DNA of 64,000 bases from Podarcis muralis (GCF_964188315.1 NC_135659.1:27776001-27840000), one strand, 5' to 3'; numbered from the stretch's first letter, positions 11,026-46,243 are shown. Translations and numbers: made by a program. Notes: a model not told the origin generated them from the letters alone.

Positions 11026-11374
11026 NNNNNNNNNNNNNNNNNNNNNNNNNNNNNNNNNNNNNNNNNNNNNNNNNNNNNNNNNNNNNNNNNNNNNNNNNNN
11101 NNNNNNNNNNNNNNNNNNNNNNNNNNNNNNNNNNNNNNNNNNNNNNNNNNNNNNNNNNNNNNNNNNNNNNNNNNNNNNNNNNNNNNNNNNNNNNNNNTGG
11201 GAGCCACGTNNNNNNNNNNNNNNNNNNNNNNNNNNNNNNNNNNNNNNNNNNNNNNNNNNNNNNNNNNNNNNNNNNNNNNNNNNNNNNNNNNNNNNNNNNN
11301 NNNNNNNNNNNNNNNNNNNNNNNNNNNNNNNNNNNNNNNNNNNNNNNNNNNNNNNNNNNNNNNNNNNNNNNNNN
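11026..11374. other. Assembly gap (two N runs separated by 12 bp of sequence)
   Basis: N at 11026-11197 and 11210-11374; island TGGGAGCCACGT at 11198-11209. Confidence 0.98.
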
Positions 11375-36235: not shown

Positions 36236-36454
<219 letters not shown>

Positions 36455-37076
36455 TCAACTCTCCTCTTTCCTCTTCTCTCCAACCAGTCGCAGGCTTCAT
36501 TTCCTATCCTGACACTTTTCCATGCTTGGAACCACCTCTTCACCTGTTATTTCTCCAGCCACACCCACCAACCAACCAACCAACCAACCAACTTTCCTCC
36601 TCAGCATAGTTTTCCCTGGACTCCCACAGAGTTGCCGTGCAGACCTGGAAAACCTGCTCTGTTGACAGGGTGGTTGTTGTTTTCTTTCTGGAAAATTCCA
36701 GAAATCTGGATGAGTTGCTAGAGAAAATCCTGTGTGTGTCTGAGGATCTACAGCCGTGTTCGGGTGTTGATAAGACTGTGGAGGGCACAGTGGACACACA
36801 ATCTCGGTATGGGAAGGTCAAGGTTGTAGTGGCCAGGAGTGGCAAATGTAGCCCTACAAAAGTCTGTCTTCATCTCTATATTTATTATTATTAACCACAA
36901 TCCTTACTTTAATTAGAAGCATTTATGGACCACTTAATCATAAACTCTCTAAGCAGTGCATATATTAAATTTATCTATTTATTTAGAAAGATGTCTAGGA
37001 CAGCGGACCAGAAACCTCTCTAAGTTTATAGTATATCACTTATATGTATAAACACGTGTGTATAATAATGCATATA

Positions 37077-38692
37077 CAGTGGTACCCCGCAAGACGAACG
37101 CCTCGCAAGACGGAAAACCCGCTAGACGAAAGGTTTTTCCGTTTTGGAGACGCTTCGCAAAACGAATTTCCCTATGGGCTTCCTTCGCAAGACGAAAGCC
37201 CATAGGGAAATCTCCGGGACAGGGCGTCTTGCCCACTGTCCTCGGACCTCCTCCCGCCGCCAGGCTTCGGAAGGCTGCTCTGAAGCCTGGCGGGGGGCGG
37301 AGAGGTTTTTTAAAAACCCCGGGACAGCGGAGGACTTCTCTGCTGTCCGGGGCGATTTTAAAATGCTGCCGGGCGGCAGCGCTGCCGCCCAGCAGCATTT
37401 AAAAAAACCCCGGGACAGCGGGGGACTTCTCCTTTGTCCCGAGGTTTTTTAAAATGCTGGCGGGCGGCAGCGAAGGCTTCGCTGCCGCCCGCCAGCATTT
37501 TAAATTCGCCCCGGACAGCGGAGAAGTCCCCCGCTGTCCCGAGGTTTTTTAAAATGCTGGCGTCTTCCCCTTTCTCCCCGGACCTCTTTTGAAGCAAGGG
37601 GCGGCAAAGGGGAGAAGCGATCTTCTCCCCGTTGCCGCCCCTTGCTTCAAAAGAGGGGACAGAGGGAAAGGCGCGCGCCTTCTCCTCTCTCCCCGGACCC
37701 CTTTTGAAACAAGGGGCGGCAAAGGGGAGAAGCGATCTTCTCTCCGTTGCCTCCCCTTGCTTCAAAAGAGGGGACAGAGGGAAAGGCGCGCGCCTTCCTC
37801 TCTCTCCCCCCGGACCCCTTTTGAAGCAAGGGGCGGCAAAGGGGAGAAGCGATCTTCTCCCCGTTGCCGCCCCTTGCTTCAAAAGAGGGGACAGAGGGAA
37901 AGGCGCGCGCCTTCCTCTCTCTCCCCCCGGACCCCTTTTGAAGCAAGGGGCGGCAAAGGGGAGAAGCGATCTTCTCCCCTCCGCCCCTTGCTTCAAAAGA
38001 GGGGAAGGCTGGCGGGGGGCGAAAATCTTTGTCCCCCCTGGCTGCCTTCCCGGGAGGGCTTTTAAATCGCCCCGGACAGCGGAGAAGTCCTCCGCTGTCC
38101 GGGGCGATTTTAAAATGCTGCCGTGGGGGGGGGAGCAAAGACTTTCGCCCCCCCAGCCTTCTGAAGGCTGGCGGGGGGCGAAAATCTTTGTCCCCCCCTG
38201 CCTGCCTGCCTGCCTTTAAAAGCCCTCCCGGGGGAGCGGAGAAACGCGCTGCGTTTCTCCGCTCTCCCGGGAGGGCTTTTAAAAGCAGGCAGGCAGGGGG
38301 GACAAAGATTTTCGCCCCCCGCCAGCCTTCAGAAGAGGTCCTGGACCTCTTCTGAAGGCTGGTGGGGGGCGAAAATCTTTGTCCCCCCTGGCTGCCTTCC
38401 CGGGAGGGCTTTTAAATCGCCCCGGACAGCGGAGAAGTCCTCCGCTGTCCGGGGCGATTTTAAAATGCTGCCGTGGGGGGGGGGGGAGCAAAGACTTTCG
38501 CCCCCCCCCCCAGCCTTCAGAAGAGGTCGGGGGACAGATTGTCCCCGGACCTGGTCTGAAGTCGGTTTCCATAGGAACGCATTAATTGATTTTCAATGCA
38601 TTCCTATGGGAAACCGTGCAGCGCAAGACGAAAAACTCGCAAGAAGAAAAAACTTGCGGAACGAATTAATTTCGTCTTGCGAGGCACCACTA
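37077..38692. mobile_element. Non-autonomous Tc1/mariner (Tigger/pogo-like) element with GC-rich internal tandem hairpin array
   Basis: TA|CAGTGGTACCCCGCAAGACGAA ... TTCGTCTTGCGAGGCACCACTA|TA. Its termini are shared with the short copy at 62388-62700. Confidence 0.88.
37578..38004. repeat. Minisatellite of 115-117-bp palindromic units (3 full plus 1 partial)
   Basis: Unit marker CCGGAC at 37578, 37693, 37810 and 37927. Each unit contains a long inverted repeat. Confidence 0.92.
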
Positions 38693-38734
38693 TACTATGA
38701 AAGAATTCAAGGCTGGACTGGATGAATCGAGAAA

Positions 38735-38744
38735 CAAGATGGCG
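38735..38744 (+). promoter_or_regulatory. YY1 consensus motif (CAAGATGGCG) near the LINE 5' end; candidate internal promoter element
   Basis: Exact YY1 core at +28 to +37 of the element. An ETS-type ACTTCCTG lies at about 38808-38815. Function is inferred. Confidence 0.5.
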
Positions 38745-39359
38745 ACGGAGACAGCAGCCTAGCCAGTCTCCTCTGCTTTTAACTAAGCTTTTAAGTAGTT
38801 TTTAGCCACTTCCTGGTTTTAAACTCTCAGTTTTAACGTCTTACTAGATGTTTTACTACCTCCTCGCTTTGTTTTTAGTTTATTTAGTTTTTAGTTTATT
38901 GTTTTATTGTTTTACTGGAGAACGGCAGGGCGGAGCAGCGGGTCGAGGGAAGCCACTTTCTACCTCCGAATAGCAATGCTCCGAGCTCGCAGAGAAAGCA
39001 CCTCACTCTCAAGTTAAAGAAATCTGGAGCATAAACTGAAGTCTGGGAGCAACAAGGAGAACCGGAGGGGAAAAAAAATTCGTGGAGTTCAGCTGACAGC
39101 CGAAATCAGCACAGACGCAAACTTATATGCAGAGCGGAAAAAGGAAAGTGAGTTGCCCTAACGGCTATTGTTTCTTTCCCCCTACTAACCTTTTAAAGAG
39201 TAACTTTTTAAGAAGATACACTGAGTGTTTTATCATTGTTTTAAGTGATAAGGAAGACTAACAGCTGAAGGAAACCTGCTGTGAACTTTTACTGCAGCTG
39301 AGCATTGTAGTGTGTTTATTACAACAATAAAGAAATAATTTTACAACTTTAAAGAAACA

Positions 39360-41468
39360 ATGGTGACGACCAGGAGTGGCTGCAAAACCTCAGGCTTTTC
39401 TCTGAAGGCTGTAAGACCCACCTTTAAAAGAACCACTCTAAAGAATGCGCAAACAAAAATCACCCGCTTCTACATAAACAGAGCAAAATGTGGAACAAAT
39501 GAGGAAACGACTAAAATGAGTGAGAACAAGAACAAGAAGGGAAGAGAAATTCTACTCTCTCCTACCAATCTTTCTTACAGCCATAGTGAAGGACTGGTTA
39601 TGCAAAGAAAGGAGTGTACTAAAAGCAGTGATAAAAGCCTGAATATAGTGGAAGCAACACAAAATATCCTCGATACAGCCGATGAGGCATCCCCGAAACT
39701 GAAAGCCAAATCCCAAGTTCCCCCCGAACCATCGTTAGATCAAAAAATGGAGGAACTAATGTTAAAACAAATTTCGGAATTGGCCTCGGGAAATATTAAA
39801 CCTTCGAAAGACTCTTATCCTCATTCCCATGAGACAAATGAAGAGGATCTCTCAATCATCAAATGGCTAGTGCTCCTTACTGAGGACATTGAATCCATAA
39901 AGTCCTACCTGGACATTTGCACAAAAATTTTTACCATCATGGCTGACTCCTGTAAAACTCTCTGGAGAAAACACGCCGGAATGCCTGCAGAATCGGAAAG
40001 TAATCATGGCCTCGCCTCCACCCTCTGTAGGAGTGGCCCATTACGGAAGGGTAAGAAAACCTGCAGAGCTAATGCTTGTAACAGGAGATCCATAGTTGTA
40101 AAGAATGTTAAAAAAAGTAAAAACATAAAAAATTTTAAGACAGTGCATTATAAAAAAATGGTTTTTAAAAAACTTTTTAACTTACTTGAGAGCACAACAG
40201 CCTCTGGGACTAGAGGGAACCTGGTGAAGTCTTTAGCCAAGAAGTCAGTTAAACAGGATTTGCCCCCAAACGTCTGTGCTGATAAAGCTCTGGATTGTCT
40301 AAAACCTTCAGCGCATGCTCCACCACCAAGCGCTAAGCAAGACCTATTGCCCCAGGATCCATGGTCCTACGTTTTAACCATAGACAACTCCAAATCCAAT
40401 AAGGAGAGCATTTCAACAAATAAGAACTGGAAGCTGGTGTTGCTTCAAAACAAGCTTGTTTTTTCAAGCTATCCTAAGCCTCCAGGATTTATATCACAAG
40501 AGGATCGCAAAGTCCATTTACTGAACTTCCTTAAGGCATATATGCCAGGTACTTTGAGTAATCCCTCGGAGTTGGACAAAGTGGAATATCTATATTTTGA
40601 TGGCTTGTTTGCCAGGGCGGTGGCTACATTCCATGATCGGAGATTGGCAAAACTGATATATAAACACAGAGAACACCTAAAGACAAGTGGTGTAAAAATA
40701 TCAAGATACTTTAAAAATGTGGCCTCTCCTATCCCACTATTCCCCAGTCCTGCAACCTCGACTGCAGCACCTCGTCAAAAGGCTGAACACCACACTTTAA
40801 TTGATATAAAAGCCACTGAGCACTCGCCTAATCACCACCCAGAGTTACTTACTAATGATCTTCAAAGACCAGACTTTCCTGGGACTTTATATGAGGCGAG
40901 CCAAGGTAACGGGTTCGAAAGTTTTGAAAATAACTTAATTAACTCCTACTGCGCTCTCCCCCAAGAAACTCAGAACAAAATACTCTATAGACTGAATAAC
41001 CTTCGTTCTTGTCTGACAAATCTGACGAAGGACCAACAGGGACTACACAACCAAAACATATCTGATTATGTCCCAGATCAGGTCTCATGCTTCTATCGTC
41101 ACGAGCTGGATTTATGGGTCGGGAAACCCTCTGTCACCCCAGGCCAATTGGTTGTTGCGGAGATGAATCCATCCTCTCAGATCTTGGAGCCGAAACGCCC
41201 CTCCTATAACCCAGCTCGCATACAACCCATCTCAGAGGCAAACCTGGTCACTACATTAGCATGGGATAAAATGAGAGAATTAAATGAGACTGAATTGGGC
41301 TCCCCAAATAAAGTCCCCAGCATGGGTGCGCCAGGTTGCAACCCTAGCATTCCACCCTCCTCAAATGTGAGCATACTGAATAAATCTTTAAACATCATTG
41401 AATTAGCATCTGAACTATCTGAACCCGCAGAAAGGGCTAATAGTAAGAACCAGAGGAACTTGGTGTGA
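39360..41468 (+). CDS. LINE ORF1 protein (702 aa): basic N-terminus, probable coiled coil, possible RRM-like segment
   Basis: Uninterrupted ORF upstream of ORF2 inside the TSD-bounded element; starts MVTTRS. No esterase, PHD or CCHC motif was recognised. Confidence 0.85.
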   Translation: MVTTRSGCKTSGFSLKAVRPTFKRTTLKNAQTKITRFYINRAKCGTNEETTKMSENKNKKGREILLSPTNLSYSHSEGLVMQRKECTKSSDKSLNIVEATQNILDTADEASPKLKAKSQVPPEPSLDQKMEELMLKQISELASGNIKPSKDSYPHSHETNEEDLSIIKWLVLLTEDIESIKSYLDICTKIFTIMADSCKTLWRKHAGMPAESESNHGLASTLCRSGPLRKGKKTCRANACNRRSIVVKNVKKSKNIKNFKTVHYKKMVFKKLFNLLESTTASGTRGNLVKSLAKKSVKQDLPPNVCADKALDCLKPSAHAPPPSAKQDLLPQDPWSYVLTIDNSKSNKESISTNKNWKLVLLQNKLVFSSYPKPPGFISQEDRKVHLLNFLKAYMPGTLSNPSELDKVEYLYFDGLFARAVATFHDRRLAKLIYKHREHLKTSGVKISRYFKNVASPIPLFPSPATSTAAPRQKAEHHTLIDIKATEHSPNHHPELLTNDLQRPDFPGTLYEASQGNGFESFENNLINSYCALPQETQNKILYRLNNLRSCLTNLTKDQQGLHNQNISDYVPDQVSCFYRHELDLWVGKPSVTPGQLVVAEMNPSSQILEPKRPSYNPARIQPISEANLVTTLAWDKMRELNETELGSPNKVPSMGAPGCNPSIPPSSNVSILNKSLNIIELASELSEPAERANSKNQRNLV

Positions 41469-41537
41469 CATCCGGAATGCACCACGCATACCTCACTAGC
41501 ACCCTTAAATCAAAGATCTTTCCAAACTCTTTCTATT

Positions 41538-44500
41538 ATGTCCTGGAATGTAGCTGGACTCTCATGTAAATTAGCTGATTCTGATTTTATAAATTTTCTT
41601 GGGTCTTATGACATAATACTTCTGCAGGAAACCTGGGCTCTTAAACCTTTAAATATTCCTAATTTTATTACTTATAATTTACCTGCTACTAAAATGTCAA
41701 CAAAAGGTCGCCCTAAAGCTGGTTTGATCTGTGGTATCAAACAGTCTTCTAACCTTAAAATTAATTATATCAGAAATATTGGACAGTATGCTCAACTGTT
41801 ATCATTTTCCATTGTTTACCGGGAAATTATTCTTTTAAATATATATTTTCCTCCCCTAGAGTTGGAAAGTAGTCCAGGTTATGGTTGGAATATAGTCTCT
41901 GAAGAGTTGTATCTAATACGTAGTAAATCCCCAAATATCCCCCTGATTGTAACGGGAGACACCAATGCTCGAATTGGATCAGATAATACAGCTCTCTATA
42001 AACACTATGTCTCAAATCTAGCTGAAGATGCCCCACTTCCATTGAGAATAGGGAGGAATTCAAAGGACATCATTATTAATAAAGCAGGAGGAAAACTCTT
42101 ACAATTGGTTTTAGAATTTAACCTCTCATTTTTGAATGGCTCAATGTGGCCGGATATTCCAGGAAATTTTACCTTCAGCTCCAAAAGGGGTAGGAGCGTT
42201 ATCGATTATTCTCTAGTTTCCGTTGAAATGTTAAATGAAGTTGCCTCTTTTACAGTTGTACCTCGCTCAGAAAGTGACCACTTCCCAATAGTTTTAGAGA
42301 TGTACAGGAATCCTAGAAATAATGGTATTAGTCCTCTTATTAGTATTGATAAGACTGTCTATGCCAAAAGAATTTATATAAGTGATAAAAATAGGGAGGA
42401 TCTATTAGCAGTATTTGAAAATAACCCAGTTATTCTCGAACCTGCGGCTAACCAAAATTTGATGCCCTTGGAGGATAATGATTGTTATTATAAGAGTATC
42501 CAGGAATTATTTTCTTCTTTTTTAGACCCTCAGTTCAGCAACAAACCTTCAAATAAGTATAACTGGTTTGATAAAGGTTGTATTAACTATAAGAAAGAAC
42601 TTAGAACTTGTCTAAAAGAAGCCTATATTACCAACTCTCAAGGTCTCTGGAAGACTTATTTTGAAATGAAAAAGGCTTTTAAGAACATGCTCCTGGAAAA
42701 AAAATCTGAGTTTGCACTAGCCAAATGGTCTAAAATTGTTACTGCATTAGAAATTAAAGATACCAAAACCTTTTGGTCACTTCTCTCAATAAAAGATATC
42801 ACTGATTTCCCTAATATAAGCGATGAGGCTTGGATTTCACATTTTACTGCTGTTTTTTATGATCACCAAGTTTGTAAAAAGGAAAATTTTAAATCTTCTC
42901 TGGCAAAAACCACACAATTTCAAATTACTGTTGAGGAGATGAAAAGGATAATCTTTTCGTTTAAGCAAGGGAAATCACCTGGTATGGATGGCATTCCAAT
43001 AGACCTGTTGAGATTAGATGTAGAATGGTGGGCCAATAAACTTGTACCGCTTTTTAATTCTATCTATCACTCAGCCCTTGTACCTAAGTCATGGAACAAC
43101 TCAATAGTGGTACCGATCTTTAAAAAAGGTGATAGGAATTGCCAAGAGAACTACAGGCCTATAAGTTTGTTACCATGCATAAGTAAGATATATGCCAAAT
43201 CTCTGCTTATTAAATTGGAAGAATGGATGCTGACAAAAGGTCTACCTGGTAAAGAGCAAGCTGGTTTTAAGGCAGGCTCGTCAACTCTTGACCAGTGTCT
43301 AGTGTTAAGTCATCTTGTGGATAAATATGTCATGAGAAATAAACGAAAACTCTTTGTGGCATTTGTGGATTTAAAAAGTGCCTTTGATTCGGTCGACCGC
43401 AATAAACTATGGACTAAACTAGAACACCTTGGTATCGACCCATATCTACTTACACTGATTCAAAGTCTACATTCTAATAACCAAATATATGTTAAAGTAT
43501 CAAAAGACGGTAGACTTGCAGGTCCTATTCTGAATAATCGAGGAGTTAGGCAAGGCTGTATCTTGGCCCCTACCCTATTTAATCTATTTTTATCTGACCT
43601 ACCATTATTTCTTCAAAACGCAACCACTCATACTCCTTATTTAAACAAGAGCCCACTCTTTTTATTACTTTATGCAGATGATGCTGTAATTATTTCACTC
43701 TCTGTTTTGGGTTTAAAAAAATTATTTAAGAGTTTCTCAAACTACTGCTCTCTCAATAATCTCAAAATTAATTATGATAAGACAAAGATTATGCAATTCA
43801 GAAAGAGAGGGAACCCAAAAGGCTGTATAATTAATGGACATCTAATACAGGAAGTTAAGCACTTCAATTATCTGGGAATCACATTCAAAAATAATATGAA
43901 TTGGAATACACATATATGTGCTGCAATAGTTAAGGCCAAAGTGACAGCCCACCATATTAAATCCTATTTTTTTTCTCAAGTAGGAAACCGATTTATTCCA
44001 GCTGTATTGCAAGTGATTGACATGAAACTCTGTGCCCAACTTCTATACGGCACACCAGTGTGGATTTCAGGTGACCTCAAGAGGTTGGATAAATTTCACG
44101 CATCCCTTCTGAGGTCATTATTAGGACTTGCAAACTCTGTAAAATATGAAACAATATGTTGTGAGCTGGGAATACTGCCTTTATCAGTAAGAGCATGGCT
44201 GAGGACCTTGAAATATTGGATCTTCCTACATTATAGAGCCCTATCCCCTAATTCTATACTTTACGATCTTTTAAGTGATAGTGCAATCTACAATCTATCA
44301 TTGATTTGTAGGAGAAAACTGGATTCGATAGGGCTCACTCTAACTGATTTTGAAATCTCTGATCCCAAAGATATATGGGAAATTATCAGGAAGACCCTCA
44401 CAGAAAAAAGTGTTCTCGCCATGCTTGAGGTTGCAAAGCACAGCACCTGCTCTCCTATCCACCTAAATCTCCCTTTGTGTAGAGATTTCCAAAAGGGATA

Positions 44501-44852
44501 CATGACAAATCTGAAGAAACATGAATTGTGTAGGCTGTTTATGTTGGCCAGATTTAACATGTTTCCCTCGGCGGTAGTGAGAGGAAGATACTTAGCTATC
44601 CCAGAATCAGAGCGTCTCTGCAAATGCAGAAAACAGGAACCCGATACTCTAGAGCATATATTCTTTTCCTGTGATTTTGGCAGCTATGCCAGAGGACAAT
44701 TATTTGAGGCCCTAAAATTTAATAGACAGATTTTTACACAACCAACTGTTCAGGACCTGCTGGCGGACAGCGATGATCAAATTACCTTAATAACGGCTGA
44801 ATTTTTAAGTGCTGTCCATGAAGAAAGAGTGGGCCATGGTAAAGAGACTTAG
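41538..44852 (+). CDS. LINE ORF2 protein (1104 aa): AP endonuclease, reverse transcriptase and C-terminal Cys/His motif
   Basis: APE motifs SWNVAGL, LLQETW, GDTNARIG, SVIDY and SDHFPI. RT motifs KSPGMDG, YRPISLL, FVDLKSAFDSV, GVRQGCILAPTLF and YADD (43671-43682). C-terminal GRY...RLCKC...HIFFSC (44619-44672). No internal stops. Confidence 0.97.
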   Translation: MSWNVAGLSCKLADSDFINFLGSYDIILLQETWALKPLNIPNFITYNLPATKMSTKGRPKAGLICGIKQSSNLKINYIRNIGQYAQLLSFSIVYREIILLNIYFPPLELESSPGYGWNIVSEELYLIRSKSPNIPLIVTGDTNARIGSDNTALYKHYVSNLAEDAPLPLRIGRNSKDIIINKAGGKLLQLVLEFNLSFLNGSMWPDIPGNFTFSSKRGRSVIDYSLVSVEMLNEVASFTVVPRSESDHFPIVLEMYRNPRNNGISPLISIDKTVYAKRIYISDKNREDLLAVFENNPVILEPAANQNLMPLEDNDCYYKSIQELFSSFLDPQFSNKPSNKYNWFDKGCINYKKELRTCLKEAYITNSQGLWKTYFEMKKAFKNMLLEKKSEFALAKWSKIVTALEIKDTKTFWSLLSIKDITDFPNISDEAWISHFTAVFYDHQVCKKENFKSSLAKTTQFQITVEEMKRIIFSFKQGKSPGMDGIPIDLLRLDVEWWANKLVPLFNSIYHSALVPKSWNNSIVVPIFKKGDRNCQENYRPISLLPCISKIYAKSLLIKLEEWMLTKGLPGKEQAGFKAGSSTLDQCLVLSHLVDKYVMRNKRKLFVAFVDLKSAFDSVDRNKLWTKLEHLGIDPYLLTLIQSLHSNNQIYVKVSKDGRLAGPILNNRGVRQGCILAPTLFNLFLSDLPLFLQNATTHTPYLNKSPLFLLLYADDAVIISLSVLGLKKLFKSFSNYCSLNNLKINYDKTKIMQFRKRGNPKGCIINGHLIQEVKHFNYLGITFKNNMNWNTHICAAIVKAKVTAHHIKSYFFSQVGNRFIPAVLQVIDMKLCAQLLYGTPVWISGDLKRLDKFHASLLRSLLGLANSVKYETICCELGILPLSVRAWLRTLKYWIFLHYRALSPNSILYDLLSDSAIYNLSLICRRKLDSIGLTLTDFEISDPKDIWEIIRKTLTEKSVLAMLEVAKHSTCSPIHLNLPLCRDFQKGYMTNLKKHELCRLFMLARFNMFPSAVVRGRYLAIPESERLCKCRKQEPDTLEHIFFSCDFGSYARGQLFEALKFNRQIFTQPTVQDLLADSDDQITLITAEFLSAVHEERVGHGKET

Positions 44853-45721
44853 TGGTTTTTAATGGTAGGTGATGTTGCTGTGTTGTATTATATTATGTAT
44901 GTACATCGATTTATTTCTTGGAGTTAAGAATAGGACTGGGTTAAATTGTGTTCACTGAGCCCGTATTTTATACAGTCTGTATATGATGTTTGTTTGTTAA
45001 TGTGAGATGCGATATGCCTAATAAAGGATTTTGAATTTGAATTTGAATACTATGAAAGAATTGTTCATTTTTAAAGCGCAACCAGTAAAAAAAAAACCCC
45101 AACATGTTCTTGTCAATATCAAGAAGTGAGACAAGGCTTAGCAAAGAACCATGAAGGTCAACTTGCTTTTGAGTTTTTTCAGAAATTTGTTTTTACTAAC
45201 TATAGTTTACTTGGGGGTCTTGAGCTCAGACATAATGAGGAATTCTGGTCAATTTAAAAACAGAAGGGAAAGCTTCTGATCTCTTGGGTGGAGGAACCCG
45301 AATCAGATTCATGCTCACCATAGAGTTATGCATGAAAAGGCCAAGCAACATGGGGAAAGTCACCCAGTAAGGTTGAATGGGGATTTGCACCTGGATCTCC
45401 CAACCCTAGTCTGAAGCTGCAGCTACTGCAGCACAATGGGCGTCACCTTTCTTGACCTTGTGCTATGTCTGGCTCTGTATAAACACTGCACACAAGACAG
45501 CAAGAGTAGTTTACATTTTAAGGGAACTGGCATAATAATGCAAATGCTTTATGGGGCACACTTGTTGCACCAAGCTTGCCGCAAACTGGAAAATGGGGTG
45601 AGAAAAGTGAGATCCAGGGTCATCAAATAGTTTTATGCATCCAGATGGATATATCCTGCAGTTGCTTCCACACACTCCTCGATTCTTTTGTGAATTGCCA
45701 ATGTTCAGTCACAGCAGATAC

Positions 45722-46243
45722 ATAAAAGCGATGACAAACCTAGACAGCATCTTAAAAAGCAGAGACATCACTTTGCCAATAAAGGTCCGTATAGTTAAAG
45801 CCATAGTTTTCCCAGTAGTGATGCATGGAAGCGAGAGCTGGACCATAAAGAAGGCCGATCGCCGAAGAATTGATGCTTTTGAATTATGGTGCTGGAGGAG
45901 ACTCTTGAGAGTCCCATGGACTGCAAGAAGATCAAACCTATCCATTCTGAAGGAAATCAGCCCTGAGTGCTCACTGGAAGGACAGATCGTGAAGCTGAGG
46001 CTCCAGTACTTTGGCCACCTCATGAGAAGAGAAGACTCCCTGGAAAAGCCCCTGATGTTGGGAAAGATAGAGGGCACAAGGAGAAGGGGACGACAGAGGA
46101 TGAGATGGTTGGACAGTGTTCTCAAAACTACAAGCATGAGTTTGACCAAACTGCGGGAGGCAGTGGAAGACAGGAGTGCCTGGCGTGCTCTGGTCCATGG
46201 GATCACGAAGAGTCGGACACGACTAAACGACTAAACAACAACA
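45722..46243 (+). mobile_element. BovB (RTE clade) LINE, 5'-truncated
   Basis: Encodes AMTNLDSILKSRDITLP...WCWRRLLRVPWTARRSN...GHLMRREDSLEK...KSRTRLND, the BovB ORF C-terminus. Tail GACTAAACGACTAAACAACAAC. Confidence 0.93.

What the first reader, a model, noticed from the sequence alone, without database searches (positions are those of the whole stretch)
38708..45046. Apparently intact, potentially active full-length RTE-X-like retrotransposon in a lizard DPYD intron
Both ORFs are open, catalytic APE and RT motifs are present, the 16-bp TSD is perfect, and the 5' UTR retains CpGs. All point to a very young insertion. Complete two-ORF elements of this type are, to my knowledge, poorly characterised in amniotes, so this copy offers a full blueprint (promoter, ORF1, expression signal, 3' tail) of a candidate autonomous master element.
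Basis: partly seen in the sequence, partly recalled or inferred. Interest (0 to 1): 0.8.

Follow-up and report, generated by a model that had tools for sequence, protein, structure and literature searches.

The report
Intact young LINE in lizard DPYD
A 6.3-kb jumping gene (a LINE retrotransposon) sits intact and very recently inserted in an intron of a lizard's DPYD gene; it is one of roughly a hundred near-identical copies, and comparison with relatives suggests its copying enzyme is made by ribosomes reading through a single stop codon.

Summary
Window 38708-45046 (+) is a complete APE-type non-LTR retrotransposon. It has a perfect 16-bp target-site duplication, a 652-bp 5' UTR, ORF1 (702 aa), ORF2 (1104 aa: endonuclease, reverse transcriptase with YADD, C-terminal CCHC) and a (TTTGAA)n tail. 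It lies antisense in a DPYD intron.

It is young. Contigs from a low-coverage DNA run of the same species differ from it at 10 of 4914 bases, at word depths suggesting about 100 copies. No full-length RNA appeared in two bulk RNA-seq runs.

The 'RTE-X' label is compatible but unproven. In a careful RT tree the family is its own strongly supported clade (100/99). It lies outside the L1-like and I/Jockey-like groups, in a moderately supported superclade (91/87) with a BovB-like RTE. AU tests do not reject other deep placements, and no labelled RTE-X reference was available.

Comparison with relatives added four features:
- ORF1 and ORF2 are in frame across a single stop in 9 of 10 lineages, usually followed by C and usually with no ORF2 AUG. 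This points to stop-codon readthrough.
- ORF1p has an L1-ORF1p-like RRM.
- ORF1p has a conserved N-terminal PIP-like box.
- The 5' end carries a YY1 consensus, and the 3' end a conserved AATAAA box before the tail.

The parts
38692..38707 (+). 5' copy of the 16-bp target-site duplication (ATACTATGAAAGAATT)
   Evidence: Identical to 45047-45062. The 16-mer is unique to these two places in the window.
38708..45046 (+). Whole element (6339 bp): 5' UTR, ORF1, stop plus spacer, ORF2, 3' UTR, microsatellite tail
   Evidence: No other copy or fragment of this family is in the window.
38708..39359 (+). 5' UTR (652 bp), presumed internal promoter
   Evidence: CpG o/e is 0.67 against 0.35 for the window. 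Promoter function is inferred, not shown.
38735..38746 (+). YY1-consensus box CAAGATGGCGAC, 28-39 nt from the 5' end
   Evidence: It is the exact reverse complement of the validated mouse L1 Tf YY1 site GTCGCCATCTTG (PMC11602158). CAAGATGGCGTC (L004) and CAAGATGGCCTC (L003) occur in the 5' regions of two relatives with only 31-36% ORF2 identity. In L003 it lies just downstream of CR1-like flank sequence (my reading of the translation).
39360..41468 (+). ORF1 (702 aa), strong Kozak context (acaATGg), no Pfam match
   Evidence: Homologues by sequence were found only in Podarcis and one unlabelled contig. A central domain is shared with the ORF1s of L001, L003 and L004.
39450..39473 (+). PIP-like box QTKITRFY (ORF1 aa 31-38)
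   Evidence: The same kind of motif occurs at aa 20-45 in all four family ORF1s that have a complete N-terminus: QSKLEKYF, QSKITQYF and QTKIEDFI in the relatives. The chance of a strict PIP match in 60 random residues is 0.001. PCNA binding was not tested.
40425..40724 (+). RRM-like domain of ORF1p (aa 356-455)
   Evidence: It is the only confidently folded part of the ORF1 model (pLDDT 77-88, beta-alpha-beta-beta-alpha-beta). The top 3 of 48,161 PDB chains are the human LINE-1 ORF1p RRM (Z 9.5, 9.2, 8.2; rmsd 2.2 A over 87 residues for the best). Generic RRMs score 7.5 or less.
41466..41537 (+). In-frame TGA (41466-41468, followed by C) plus a 23-codon open spacer up to the ORF2 ATG
   Evidence: A contig of depth 125 from DNA run X1 spans 41147-41828 with one change, at 41429, so the stop is a family feature. 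The arrangement is shared by relatives.
41538..44852 (+). ORF2 (1104 aa): APE endonuclease (41538-42281), RT (43122-43886, YADD at aa 712-715), CCHC motif C-x-C-x11-H-x4-C (about 44613-44672)
   Evidence: The model has pLDDT 78 and matches full-length LINE ORF2 proteins.
44853..45046 (+). 3' UTR with terminal box TGCCTAATAAAGG (45015-45027, containing AATAAA) and (TTTGAA)n tail (45030-45046)
   Evidence: The box is conserved next to a lineage-specific microsatellite in relatives: L001 TGCCTAATAAAGG plus (GTGAAA)n; L003 TGCCAATAAAGG plus (TAAC)n. L004 has a looser form, AAATAAATTT plus (CTA)n. No significant RNA fold (z 0.83).
45047..45062 (+). 3' copy of the target-site duplication
36248..36394 (-). 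Context: DPYD exon (DPD residues 767-815), which makes the element intronic and antisense

Best explanation
This is a recently inserted, structurally complete copy of a young, multi-copy autonomous non-LTR (LINE) retrotransposon family of lacertid lizards. It belongs to a distinct, deep lineage of APE-type LINEs whose best-supported kin are the RTE superfamily. It is not RTE/BovB proper; RTE-X or Proto2 is the most likely label by exclusion.

Proposed life cycle:
1. An internal promoter in the CpG-retaining 5' UTR drives transcription from the element's first bases. A YY1-consensus box lies about 30 nt from the 5' end, as in mammalian L1. (Inferred.)
2. ORF1 makes an RNA-binding protein with an L1-ORF1p-like RRM and an N-terminal PIP-like box. 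(The fold is predicted. RNA and PCNA binding are inferred.)
3. ORF2 (endonuclease, reverse transcriptase, CCHC) lies in the same frame behind one leaky-context UGA. It is made mainly as a rare ORF1-ORF2 readthrough fusion, in the manner of gag-pol. In this lacertid lineage an AUG at the start of the endonuclease may also allow reinitiation. (Inferred from comparison.)
4. The RNA ends at a conserved AATAAA-containing box followed by a hexamer microsatellite. Target-primed reverse transcription at a staggered nick gives the 16-bp duplication. (The structure is shown. The mechanism follows from established LINE biology.)
For: Anatomy and intactness:
- ORFs, domains, TSD and tail are as described.
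- All residues invariant among relatives are present.

Youth and copy number:
- In DNA run X1 (1.3 Gb, same species label) contigs over the element have word depths of 75-125, rising to 200-560 towards the 3' end.
- Seven long contig pieces differ from this copy at 10 of 4914 positions.
- 20 runs from 9 studies and two species labels hold at least half of the ORF2 words.

Selection:
- L005 is 93.5% identical over 3081 nt, with no gap and no stop.
- dN/dS is 0.24 for ORF2 and 0.42 for ORF1. Off-frame controls give 0.54-1.46.

Clade:
- In the careful RT tree the family clade has support 100/99.
- It lies outside the zf-RVT (L1-like) group (100/100) and the I/Jockey-like group (100/99).
- It lies inside a 91/87 superclade with a BovB-like RTE anchor.
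- That anchor is a 3.96-kb single-ORF element with an (ATGT)n tail.

Readthrough:
- ORF1 and ORF2 are in frame across one stop in 9 of 10 independent lineages (chance about 4e-4).
- The stop is TGA in 7 and TAG in 2. C follows it in 8 of 9, often as CAA, CAG or CTA.
- There is no AUG before the endonuclease in L001, L003, L004 or L013.

Other conserved features:
- ORF1 RRM.
- PIP-like box in 4 of 4 complete ORF1 N-termini.
- YY1 box.
- 3' box and tails.
Against: - No RNA evidence. Two bulk RNA-seq runs gave zero depth over the 5' UTR and ORF1. The few reads near the 3' end of ORF2 carry variant letters, so they come from other copies. Tissues are unknown, and germline RNA was not examined.
- The deep placement is not secure. 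AU tests do not reject the family as sister to the I/Jockey group (p 0.21) or to the L1-like group (p 0.16). The RTE anchor is a single cluster, recognised only by 29-30% identity to the window's BovB-like fragment.
- This lineage, unlike most relatives, has an AUG exactly at the endonuclease start, and its post-stop context (CAU) is not one of the classic strong motifs. Readthrough may therefore be less important here.
- One relative (L012) has overlapping ORFs in different frames.
- ORF1 dN/dS (0.42) is only modestly below the off-frame controls.
- Copy number rests on summed contig word depths and on an assumed genome size of about 1.4-1.5 Gb.
Confidence: 0.72

Rival explanations
1. ORF2 of this element is translated separately, by termination-reinitiation or leaky scanning at its own AUG (41538) as proposed for L1. 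On this view the in-frame stop has no role in this lineage.
For: The window element and its 93.5% relative L005 both have an ATG directly before the SWN endonuclease start, with A at -3. The context TGA-CAT is weaker than the TGA-CTA seen in L001 and L003. Unconventional reinitiation is the accepted model for L1 and SART1 (PMC5972666).
Against: Nine of 10 lineages are in frame. Spacers of 5-30 codons are open in all of them. L001, L003, L004 and L013 have no AUG upstream of the endonuclease. The TGA and the open 23-codon spacer are kept in the dominant family sequence.
Confidence: 0.3
2. The family is not RTE-X or part of the RTE superfamily. It is a separate clade-level lineage, or belongs to a named clade for which I had no reference (for example Proto2, or a relative of the I or L1 groups).
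For: AU tests do not reject placement beside the I/Jockey-like or L1-like groups. Superclade support is only 91/87, and its sister relation to the large invertebrate clade is 61/22. The ORF1 RRM and the C-terminal CCHC are L1-like features. Structure searches match R1, Jockey, L1 and Tx1 equally well.
Against: The best tree, in both quick and careful runs, groups it with the BovB-like anchor and excludes it from the interior of the L1-like and I/Jockey-like groups at 100/99-100. Among the clades known in amniotes, only the RTE-group clades are expected to lie outside both of those groups (my own knowledge of LINE phylogeny).
Confidence: 0.4
3. This copy, though open, is not mobile now. It may be silenced in the DPYD intron, or carry a disabling missense change, and the family may have just ceased activity.
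For: There are no RNA reads over the 5' UTR or ORF1 in two RNA-seq runs. The 10 differences from the dominant contigs were not checked for their effect on the proteins. Open frames alone do not show activity.
Against: About 0.2% divergence, a perfect TSD, all invariant residues present, retained CpGs and the YY1 box all argue the other way. The absence of RNA comes from unknown, probably somatic, tissues.
Confidence: 0.35

Closest known systems
RTE superfamily (RTE/BovB, RTE-X, Proto2)
   Same: APE plus RT in ORF2, a microsatellite 3' tail, and the best RT-tree position in one superclade with a BovB-like RTE element. The published mean length of bivalve RTE-X and Proto2 elements (4.9-5.7 kb, PMC10294476) implies more than one ORF, as here.
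   Different: RTE/BovB proper is about 3.2-4 kb and essentially single-ORF. The anchor L011 is 3955 bp with one ORF. This element is 6.3 kb, with a 702-aa ORF1 and a C-terminal CCHC. It forms its own clade apart from the anchor (100/99). Membership of RTE-X itself could not be tested.
Mammalian LINE-1
   Same: Two ORFs, an ORF1p RRM of the L1 type (Z 9.5), a YY1 box near the 5' end, a CCHC after the RT, and full-length structural similarity of ORF2p (TM about 0.57). L1 ORF2p uses a PIP box (my own knowledge: Taylor et al. 2013).
   Different: The RT tree separates it from the zf-RVT L1-like group (100/100). It has a hexamer microsatellite tail rather than poly(A). Its ORFs are in frame across a single stop, whereas L1 has a 63-nt spacer with reinitiation. 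Its PIP-like box is in ORF1p, not ORF2p.
Vingi (e.g. Vingi-1_Acar of Anolis)
   Same: An APE-type LINE of reptiles without an RNase H domain.
   Different: Vingi elements are compact and single-ORF (PMC3894237, PMC13708176; Vingi-2_Gav is 3128 bp, PMC5786205). As Ingi relatives they should fall within the I group, from whose interior this family is excluded.
Retroviral and LTR-element gag-stop-pol readthrough (e.g. MLV; Tca2 gag-UGA-pol, PMC3956500)
   Same: An upstream nucleic-acid-binding protein and a downstream polymerase lie in one frame across a single leaky-context stop. This would set a low fusion-to-ORF1p ratio.
   Different: It is a different class of element, with no protease to separate the fusion. 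Readthrough here is inferred from comparison, not measured.

Membership tests
APE-type non-LTR retrotransposon (LINE) | [quoted passage not shown] | tested here: met
   Pfam Exo_endo_phos over aa 1-248 and RVT_1 over aa 529-783. The full-length fold matches L1, R1, Jockey and Tx1 ORF2 proteins. Catalytic residues are present.
APE-type non-LTR retrotransposon (LINE) | Insertion by target-primed reverse transcription: no LTRs, a 3' tail, a variable-length target-site duplication | tested here: met
   A 16/16 TSD directly abuts the 5' end and the (TTTGAA)n tail. No terminal repeats were found by self-BLAST.
RTE clade proper (RTE-1, BovB) | Short (about 3.2 kb) element with one long ORF, only a vestigial ORF1 and no domain after the RT | tested here: not met
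   The element is 6339 bp, with a 702-aa ORF1 and about 320 aa with a CCHC after the RT. It is separate from the BovB-like anchor clade (99/94 against 100/99). It has no significant similarity to the window's BovB fragment.
RTE superfamily (RTE, RTE-X, Proto2, RTETP) | RT-domain phylogeny groups it with RTE-group elements, apart from the L1 and I/Jockey groups | tested here: inconclusive
   The best tree says yes (91/87), but AU tests do not reject the alternatives (p 0.16-0.21). Only one RTE anchor was available.
RTE-X (RTEX) clade | RT clusters with labelled RTEX reference elements (RTclass1 or Repbase) | not testable with these tools
   No labelled RTE-X sequence could be fetched. Searches returned unnamed metagenomic or Logan proteins.
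L1 clade | RT groups with L1 elements; poly(A) tail | tested here: not met
   It is outside the zf-RVT-bearing group (100/100), although AU p is 0.16 for a sister position. The tail is a hexamer microsatellite.
CR1 / L2 / Jockey / I groups | RT nested within the Jockey or I superfamilies; RNase H in many I-group members | tested here: not met
   The 17-row I/Jockey-like group is monophyletic without the family (100/99). ORF2 has no RNase H domain.
Vingi | A single ORF in a compact element related to Ingi | tested here: not met
   There are two ORFs and 6.3 kb. The single-ORF nature of Vingi comes from PMC3894237 and PMC13708176. No Vingi sequence was available for a tree.
Programmed stop-codon readthrough | An in-frame downstream ORF, a leaky stop context, conservation across relatives, and a measured readthrough product | tested here: inconclusive
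   The first three hold: 9 of 10 lineages are in frame, C follows the stop in 8 of 9, and several ORF2s lack an AUG. The product was not measured.

The most novel reading that the evidence does not exclude
The lacertid family and its relatives form a widespread, so far undescribed design of LINE. The reverse transcriptase is made only as a rare ORF1-ORF2 readthrough fusion, a gag-pol strategy without a protease. The ORF1 part supplies an L1-like RRM and a conserved N-terminal PCNA-binding (PIP) box to the integration complex. This lizard family would be a currently active amniote representative, possibly a living relative of the lineage that left the fossil RTEX-class repeats (L4, L5) in mammals.
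Probability: 0.35. Interest if true: 0.75.

Novelty: new variant of a known kind. Interest (0 to 1): 0.58.

Why it matters
Amniote LINE biology is known almost entirely from L1, CR1 and BovB. This is a complete, very young two-ORF element of a different lineage with all its parts readable: a promoter box, ORF1p domains, the ORF1-ORF2 junction and the 3' recognition box.

Three questions become directly testable on a natural, intact element:
- Do some LINEs use stop-codon readthrough to set the ORF1p:ORF2p ratio?
- Is PCNA recruitment, known for L1 ORF2p, supplied here by ORF1p?
- Is positioning of transcription initiation by YY1 a convergent solution across LINE clades?

Compact APE-type LINEs from reptiles and marsupials are already being used as gene-insertion tools (PMC13708176), so a well-described further lineage has practical interest.

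For the host, a 6.3-kb antisense insertion in a DPYD intron is probably neutral, but it would serve as a marker for population studies.

Tried and rejected
- Labelled clade references. Word-index and exhaustive protein searches, cluster look-ups and the ESM Atlas returned almost only unnamed proteins. The Vingi paper (PMC3002237) is not held. RTE-X membership therefore could not be tested.
- Structure as a clade marker. Foldseek against Swiss-Prot and PDB matched R1, Jockey, L1 and Tx1 ORF2 proteins equally (15-19% identity). The BovB-derived CFDP2 matched no better than the L1 endonuclease. This was uninformative.
- 'RNA?' runs. The small run X2 holds the element at depth 6-11. That is what DNA would give when scaled from X1 (107.5 x 76.6/1313.5 = 6.3), so I rejected it as evidence of expression.
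- Insertion polymorphism. The runs have about 1x coverage and no contig bridges the junction, so this could not be tested.
- RNA structure and families. The 3' UTR fold is no better than shuffles (z 0.83). There were no Rfam hits over 37000-45400. I saw no shared downstream hairpin in minimum-free-energy folds after the stop; this was inspection only.
- The bacterial-type promoter/terminator scan is irrelevant for a eukaryotic element.
- ORF1. It has no Pfam or Atlas match. The hhalign match to a sister-clade ORF1 is weak, though it falls on the corresponding domain (E 0.18). Foldseek on the whole low-confidence ORF1 model gave only E of about 1e-2 for RRMs; the VIA search was clearer.
- Literature. 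I found no description of programmed readthrough between LINE ORFs in the held library. From memory only, some plant L1-like elements (Ta11) have in-frame ORFs separated by one stop.

Full report
**What is there**

Window 38708-45046 (+) is a 6339-bp element flanked by a perfect 16-bp direct repeat (38692-38707 and 45047-45062). That 16-mer occurs nowhere else in the window on either strand.

It contains two long ORFs. ORF1 is 39360-41468 (702 aa) and ORF2 is 41538-44852 (1104 aa).

ORF2 has a complete Exo_endo_phos endonuclease (aa 1-248) and an RVT_1 reverse transcriptase (aa 529-783, E 2e-33). It has the expected catalytic residues: N4, E31, D141/N143, D223, S246-D247-H248 and YADD at 712-715. 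It also keeps every column that is invariant in alignments with relatives, including a C-terminal C-x-C-x11-H-x4-C motif. An AlphaFold model (pLDDT 78) matches full-length LINE ORF2 proteins over its whole length.

The element ends in (TTTGAA)x3.2. The 5' UTR has CpG o/e of 0.67 (0.83 in its first 300 bp), against 0.35 for the window.

A DPYD exon lies on the minus strand at 36248-36394. It matches DPD residues 767-815 (E 1.7e-21) and Pfam DHO_dh. The next exon is near 20.9 kb. The element is therefore intronic and antisense.

**Age, copy number, selection, expression**

Twenty public runs from nine studies and two species labels hold at least half of the ORF2 words. I laid a 1.3-Gb DNA run of the same species label on 38560-44559. 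Contig word depths are 75-125 over the 5' UTR and ORF1, rising to 200-560 towards the 3' end of ORF2. This is the 5'-truncation gradient typical of LINEs.

Seven long contig pieces (4914 nt in all) differ from this copy at only 10 positions. Lacertid genomes are about 1.4-1.5 Gb (my assumption), so single-copy depth in that run is below 1. Roughly 100 copies must therefore share these exact words. The tool warns that summed depths are not copy numbers, so this is an order of magnitude only.

A 77-Mb run labelled 'RNA?' has just the depth expected from DNA, so it is no evidence of expression. Two bulk RNA-seq runs (raw reads) gave zero depth over the 5' UTR and ORF1. A few reads near the 3' end of ORF2 carry variant letters, so they come from other copies. 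Expression is therefore unshown, and tissues are unknown.

A contig from another run (L005) is 93.5% identical over 3081 nt, with no gap and no stop. dN/dS is 0.24 for ORF2 and 0.42 for ORF1, against 0.54-1.46 in off-frame controls. Both genes have therefore stayed coding along diverging active lineages.

**Clade**

The nearest named protein is a Podarcis muralis fragment (93%). The next relatives are only 31-44% identical and are unnamed. The exhaustive search found 3745 proteins at E below 1e-30.

I built RT-domain trees. The anchors were zf-RVT-bearing proteins (L1-like), RNase H- and PHD-bearing proteins (I/Jockey-like), and the only cluster with significant similarity to the window's own BovB-like fragment. 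The locus of that last cluster, L011, is a 3955-bp single-ORF element with an (ATGT)n tail, a typical RTE.

In the careful tree (70 rows, 373 columns) the support values are:
- L1-like group: 100/100.
- I/Jockey-like group: 100/99.
- The remaining 47 rows as one superclade: 91/87. It consists of the RTE anchor trio (99/94), the lizard element's own clade of 17 rows (100/99) and a large clade of about 30%-identical sequences (94/79). By their sources the latter are probably invertebrate.

AU tests do not reject the family as sister to the I/Jockey-like group (p 0.21) or to the L1-like group (p 0.16).

The family is thus a distinct deep lineage. RTE-superfamily affinity is the best estimate. Among clades reported in amniotes (PMC5753468), RTE-X or Proto2 is what remains by exclusion. 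The label itself could not be tested for want of labelled references.

Vingi is unlikely, because it is compact and single-ORF. RTE/BovB proper is excluded by size, by ORF1 and by the tree.

**ORF1-ORF2 junction**

ORF1 and ORF2 are in the same frame. They are separated by one TGA (followed by C) and 23 open codons. The dominant family sequence keeps this arrangement: a depth-125 contig spans it with one change.

I fetched contigs for nine further lineages with an upstream ORF1. Eight are also in frame across a single stop:
- Family clade: L001 (TGA CTA A), L003 (TGA CTA G), L004 (TGA CAA TTA), L008 (TGA CAA CTA), L010 (TGA ATT).
- Sister clade: L006 (TAG CAA), L007 (TGA CAG), L013 (TAG CAA TTT).
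- Exception: only L012 has overlapping ORFs in different frames.

Nine or more of ten in frame has a chance of about 4e-4. In L001, L003, L004 and L013 the endonuclease start follows the stop with no AUG at all.

The most economical reading is programmed readthrough giving an ORF1-ORF2 fusion, with an AUG secondarily present in the lacertid lineage. The comparative support is new here. I found no description of such a mechanism for LINEs in the held literature.

**ORF1p**

ORF1p has no Pfam or Atlas match. Sequence homologues were found only in Podarcis and in one unlabelled contig. Its central domain aligns with the ORF1s of L001, L003 and L004.

The model is confident only for aa 356-455, which has a beta-alpha-beta-beta-alpha-beta fold. 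The three best of 48,161 PDB chains are the RRM of human L1 ORF1p (Z 9.5, 9.2, 8.2), above all generic RRMs (7.5 or less).

The chance of a strict match in 60 random residues is 0.001. Binding to PCNA is inferred only.

**Ends**

Twenty-eight nucleotides from the 5' end lies CAAGATGGCGAC. This is the exact reverse complement of the experimentally validated YY1 site of mouse L1 Tf (PMC11602158). L004 (CAAGATGGCGTC) and L003 (CAAGATGGCCTC) carry the same box in their 5' regions. In L003 it lies directly after flank sequence that I read as CR1-like from its translation. YY1 positions transcription initiation in human L1, so the same role is plausible here.

At the 3' end, a box TGCC(T/A)AATAAAGG directly precedes a lineage-specific microsatellite in three lineages: (TTTGAA)n here, (GTGAAA)n in L001 and (TAAC)n in L003. 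L004 has a looser form, AAATAAATTT followed by (CTA)n. This looks like a combined polyadenylation signal and RT-recognition or slippage site.

**Verdict**

This is a real, intact, very young LINE copy of a multi-copy lacertid family. The comparative features raise it above a routine repeat annotation: the in-frame stop, the L1-like RRM, the conserved PIP-like box, the YY1 box and the 3' box.

Noticed in passing
window 38560-38691: The 5' flank is an extremely abundant repeat. Summed contig word depth is about 380,000 in a 1.3-Gb DNA run, and RNA-seq depth is 200-400. It has an internal inverted repeat (joints 38622/38671) and ends at 38691-38695, right where the LINE's target duplication begins. 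It is probably a SINE or MITE. There was no Rfam hit.
   Followed up: partly
window 37576-38005 (also 37380-37562): A tandem array of a 117-bp G+C-rich unit (3.7 copies, 95% matches) lies upstream of the element. It produces several spurious overlapping ORFs on both strands.
   Followed up: no
window 45635-46234: A 199-aa ORF resembling the C-terminal part of a BovB/RTE reverse transcriptase (recognised from memory) lies about 570 bp downstream of the element. It is 29-30% identical to the RTE-like cluster P0017/P0139, and I used it as the RTE anchor.
   Followed up: partly
L012:1378-1399: One relative in the sister clade has ORF1 and ORF2 overlapping by 22 nt in different frames, instead of the in-frame stop. 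This suggests a switch of recoding strategy (frameshift or reinitiation) within the group.
   Followed up: no
L006:493-1347: The ORF1 of a sister-clade element starts with a heptad-like helix, followed by 'RRANIVIRGLKNPDE'. From memory this resembles the start of the L1 ORF1p RRM. The weak hhalign match (E 0.18) falls on the corresponding domain of the lizard ORF1.
   Followed up: partly
window 11026-11197 and 11210-11374: Two runs of N (gaps or masked); left untouched.
   Followed up: no
window 43960-44559 (RNA runs X24, X35): Low RNA-seq depth (1-5) near the 3' end of ORF2 comes from reads with fixed differences to this copy (e.g. 44175 C>T in all reads). Some other, probably truncated, copies are therefore transcribed, perhaps within host transcripts.
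   Followed up: no
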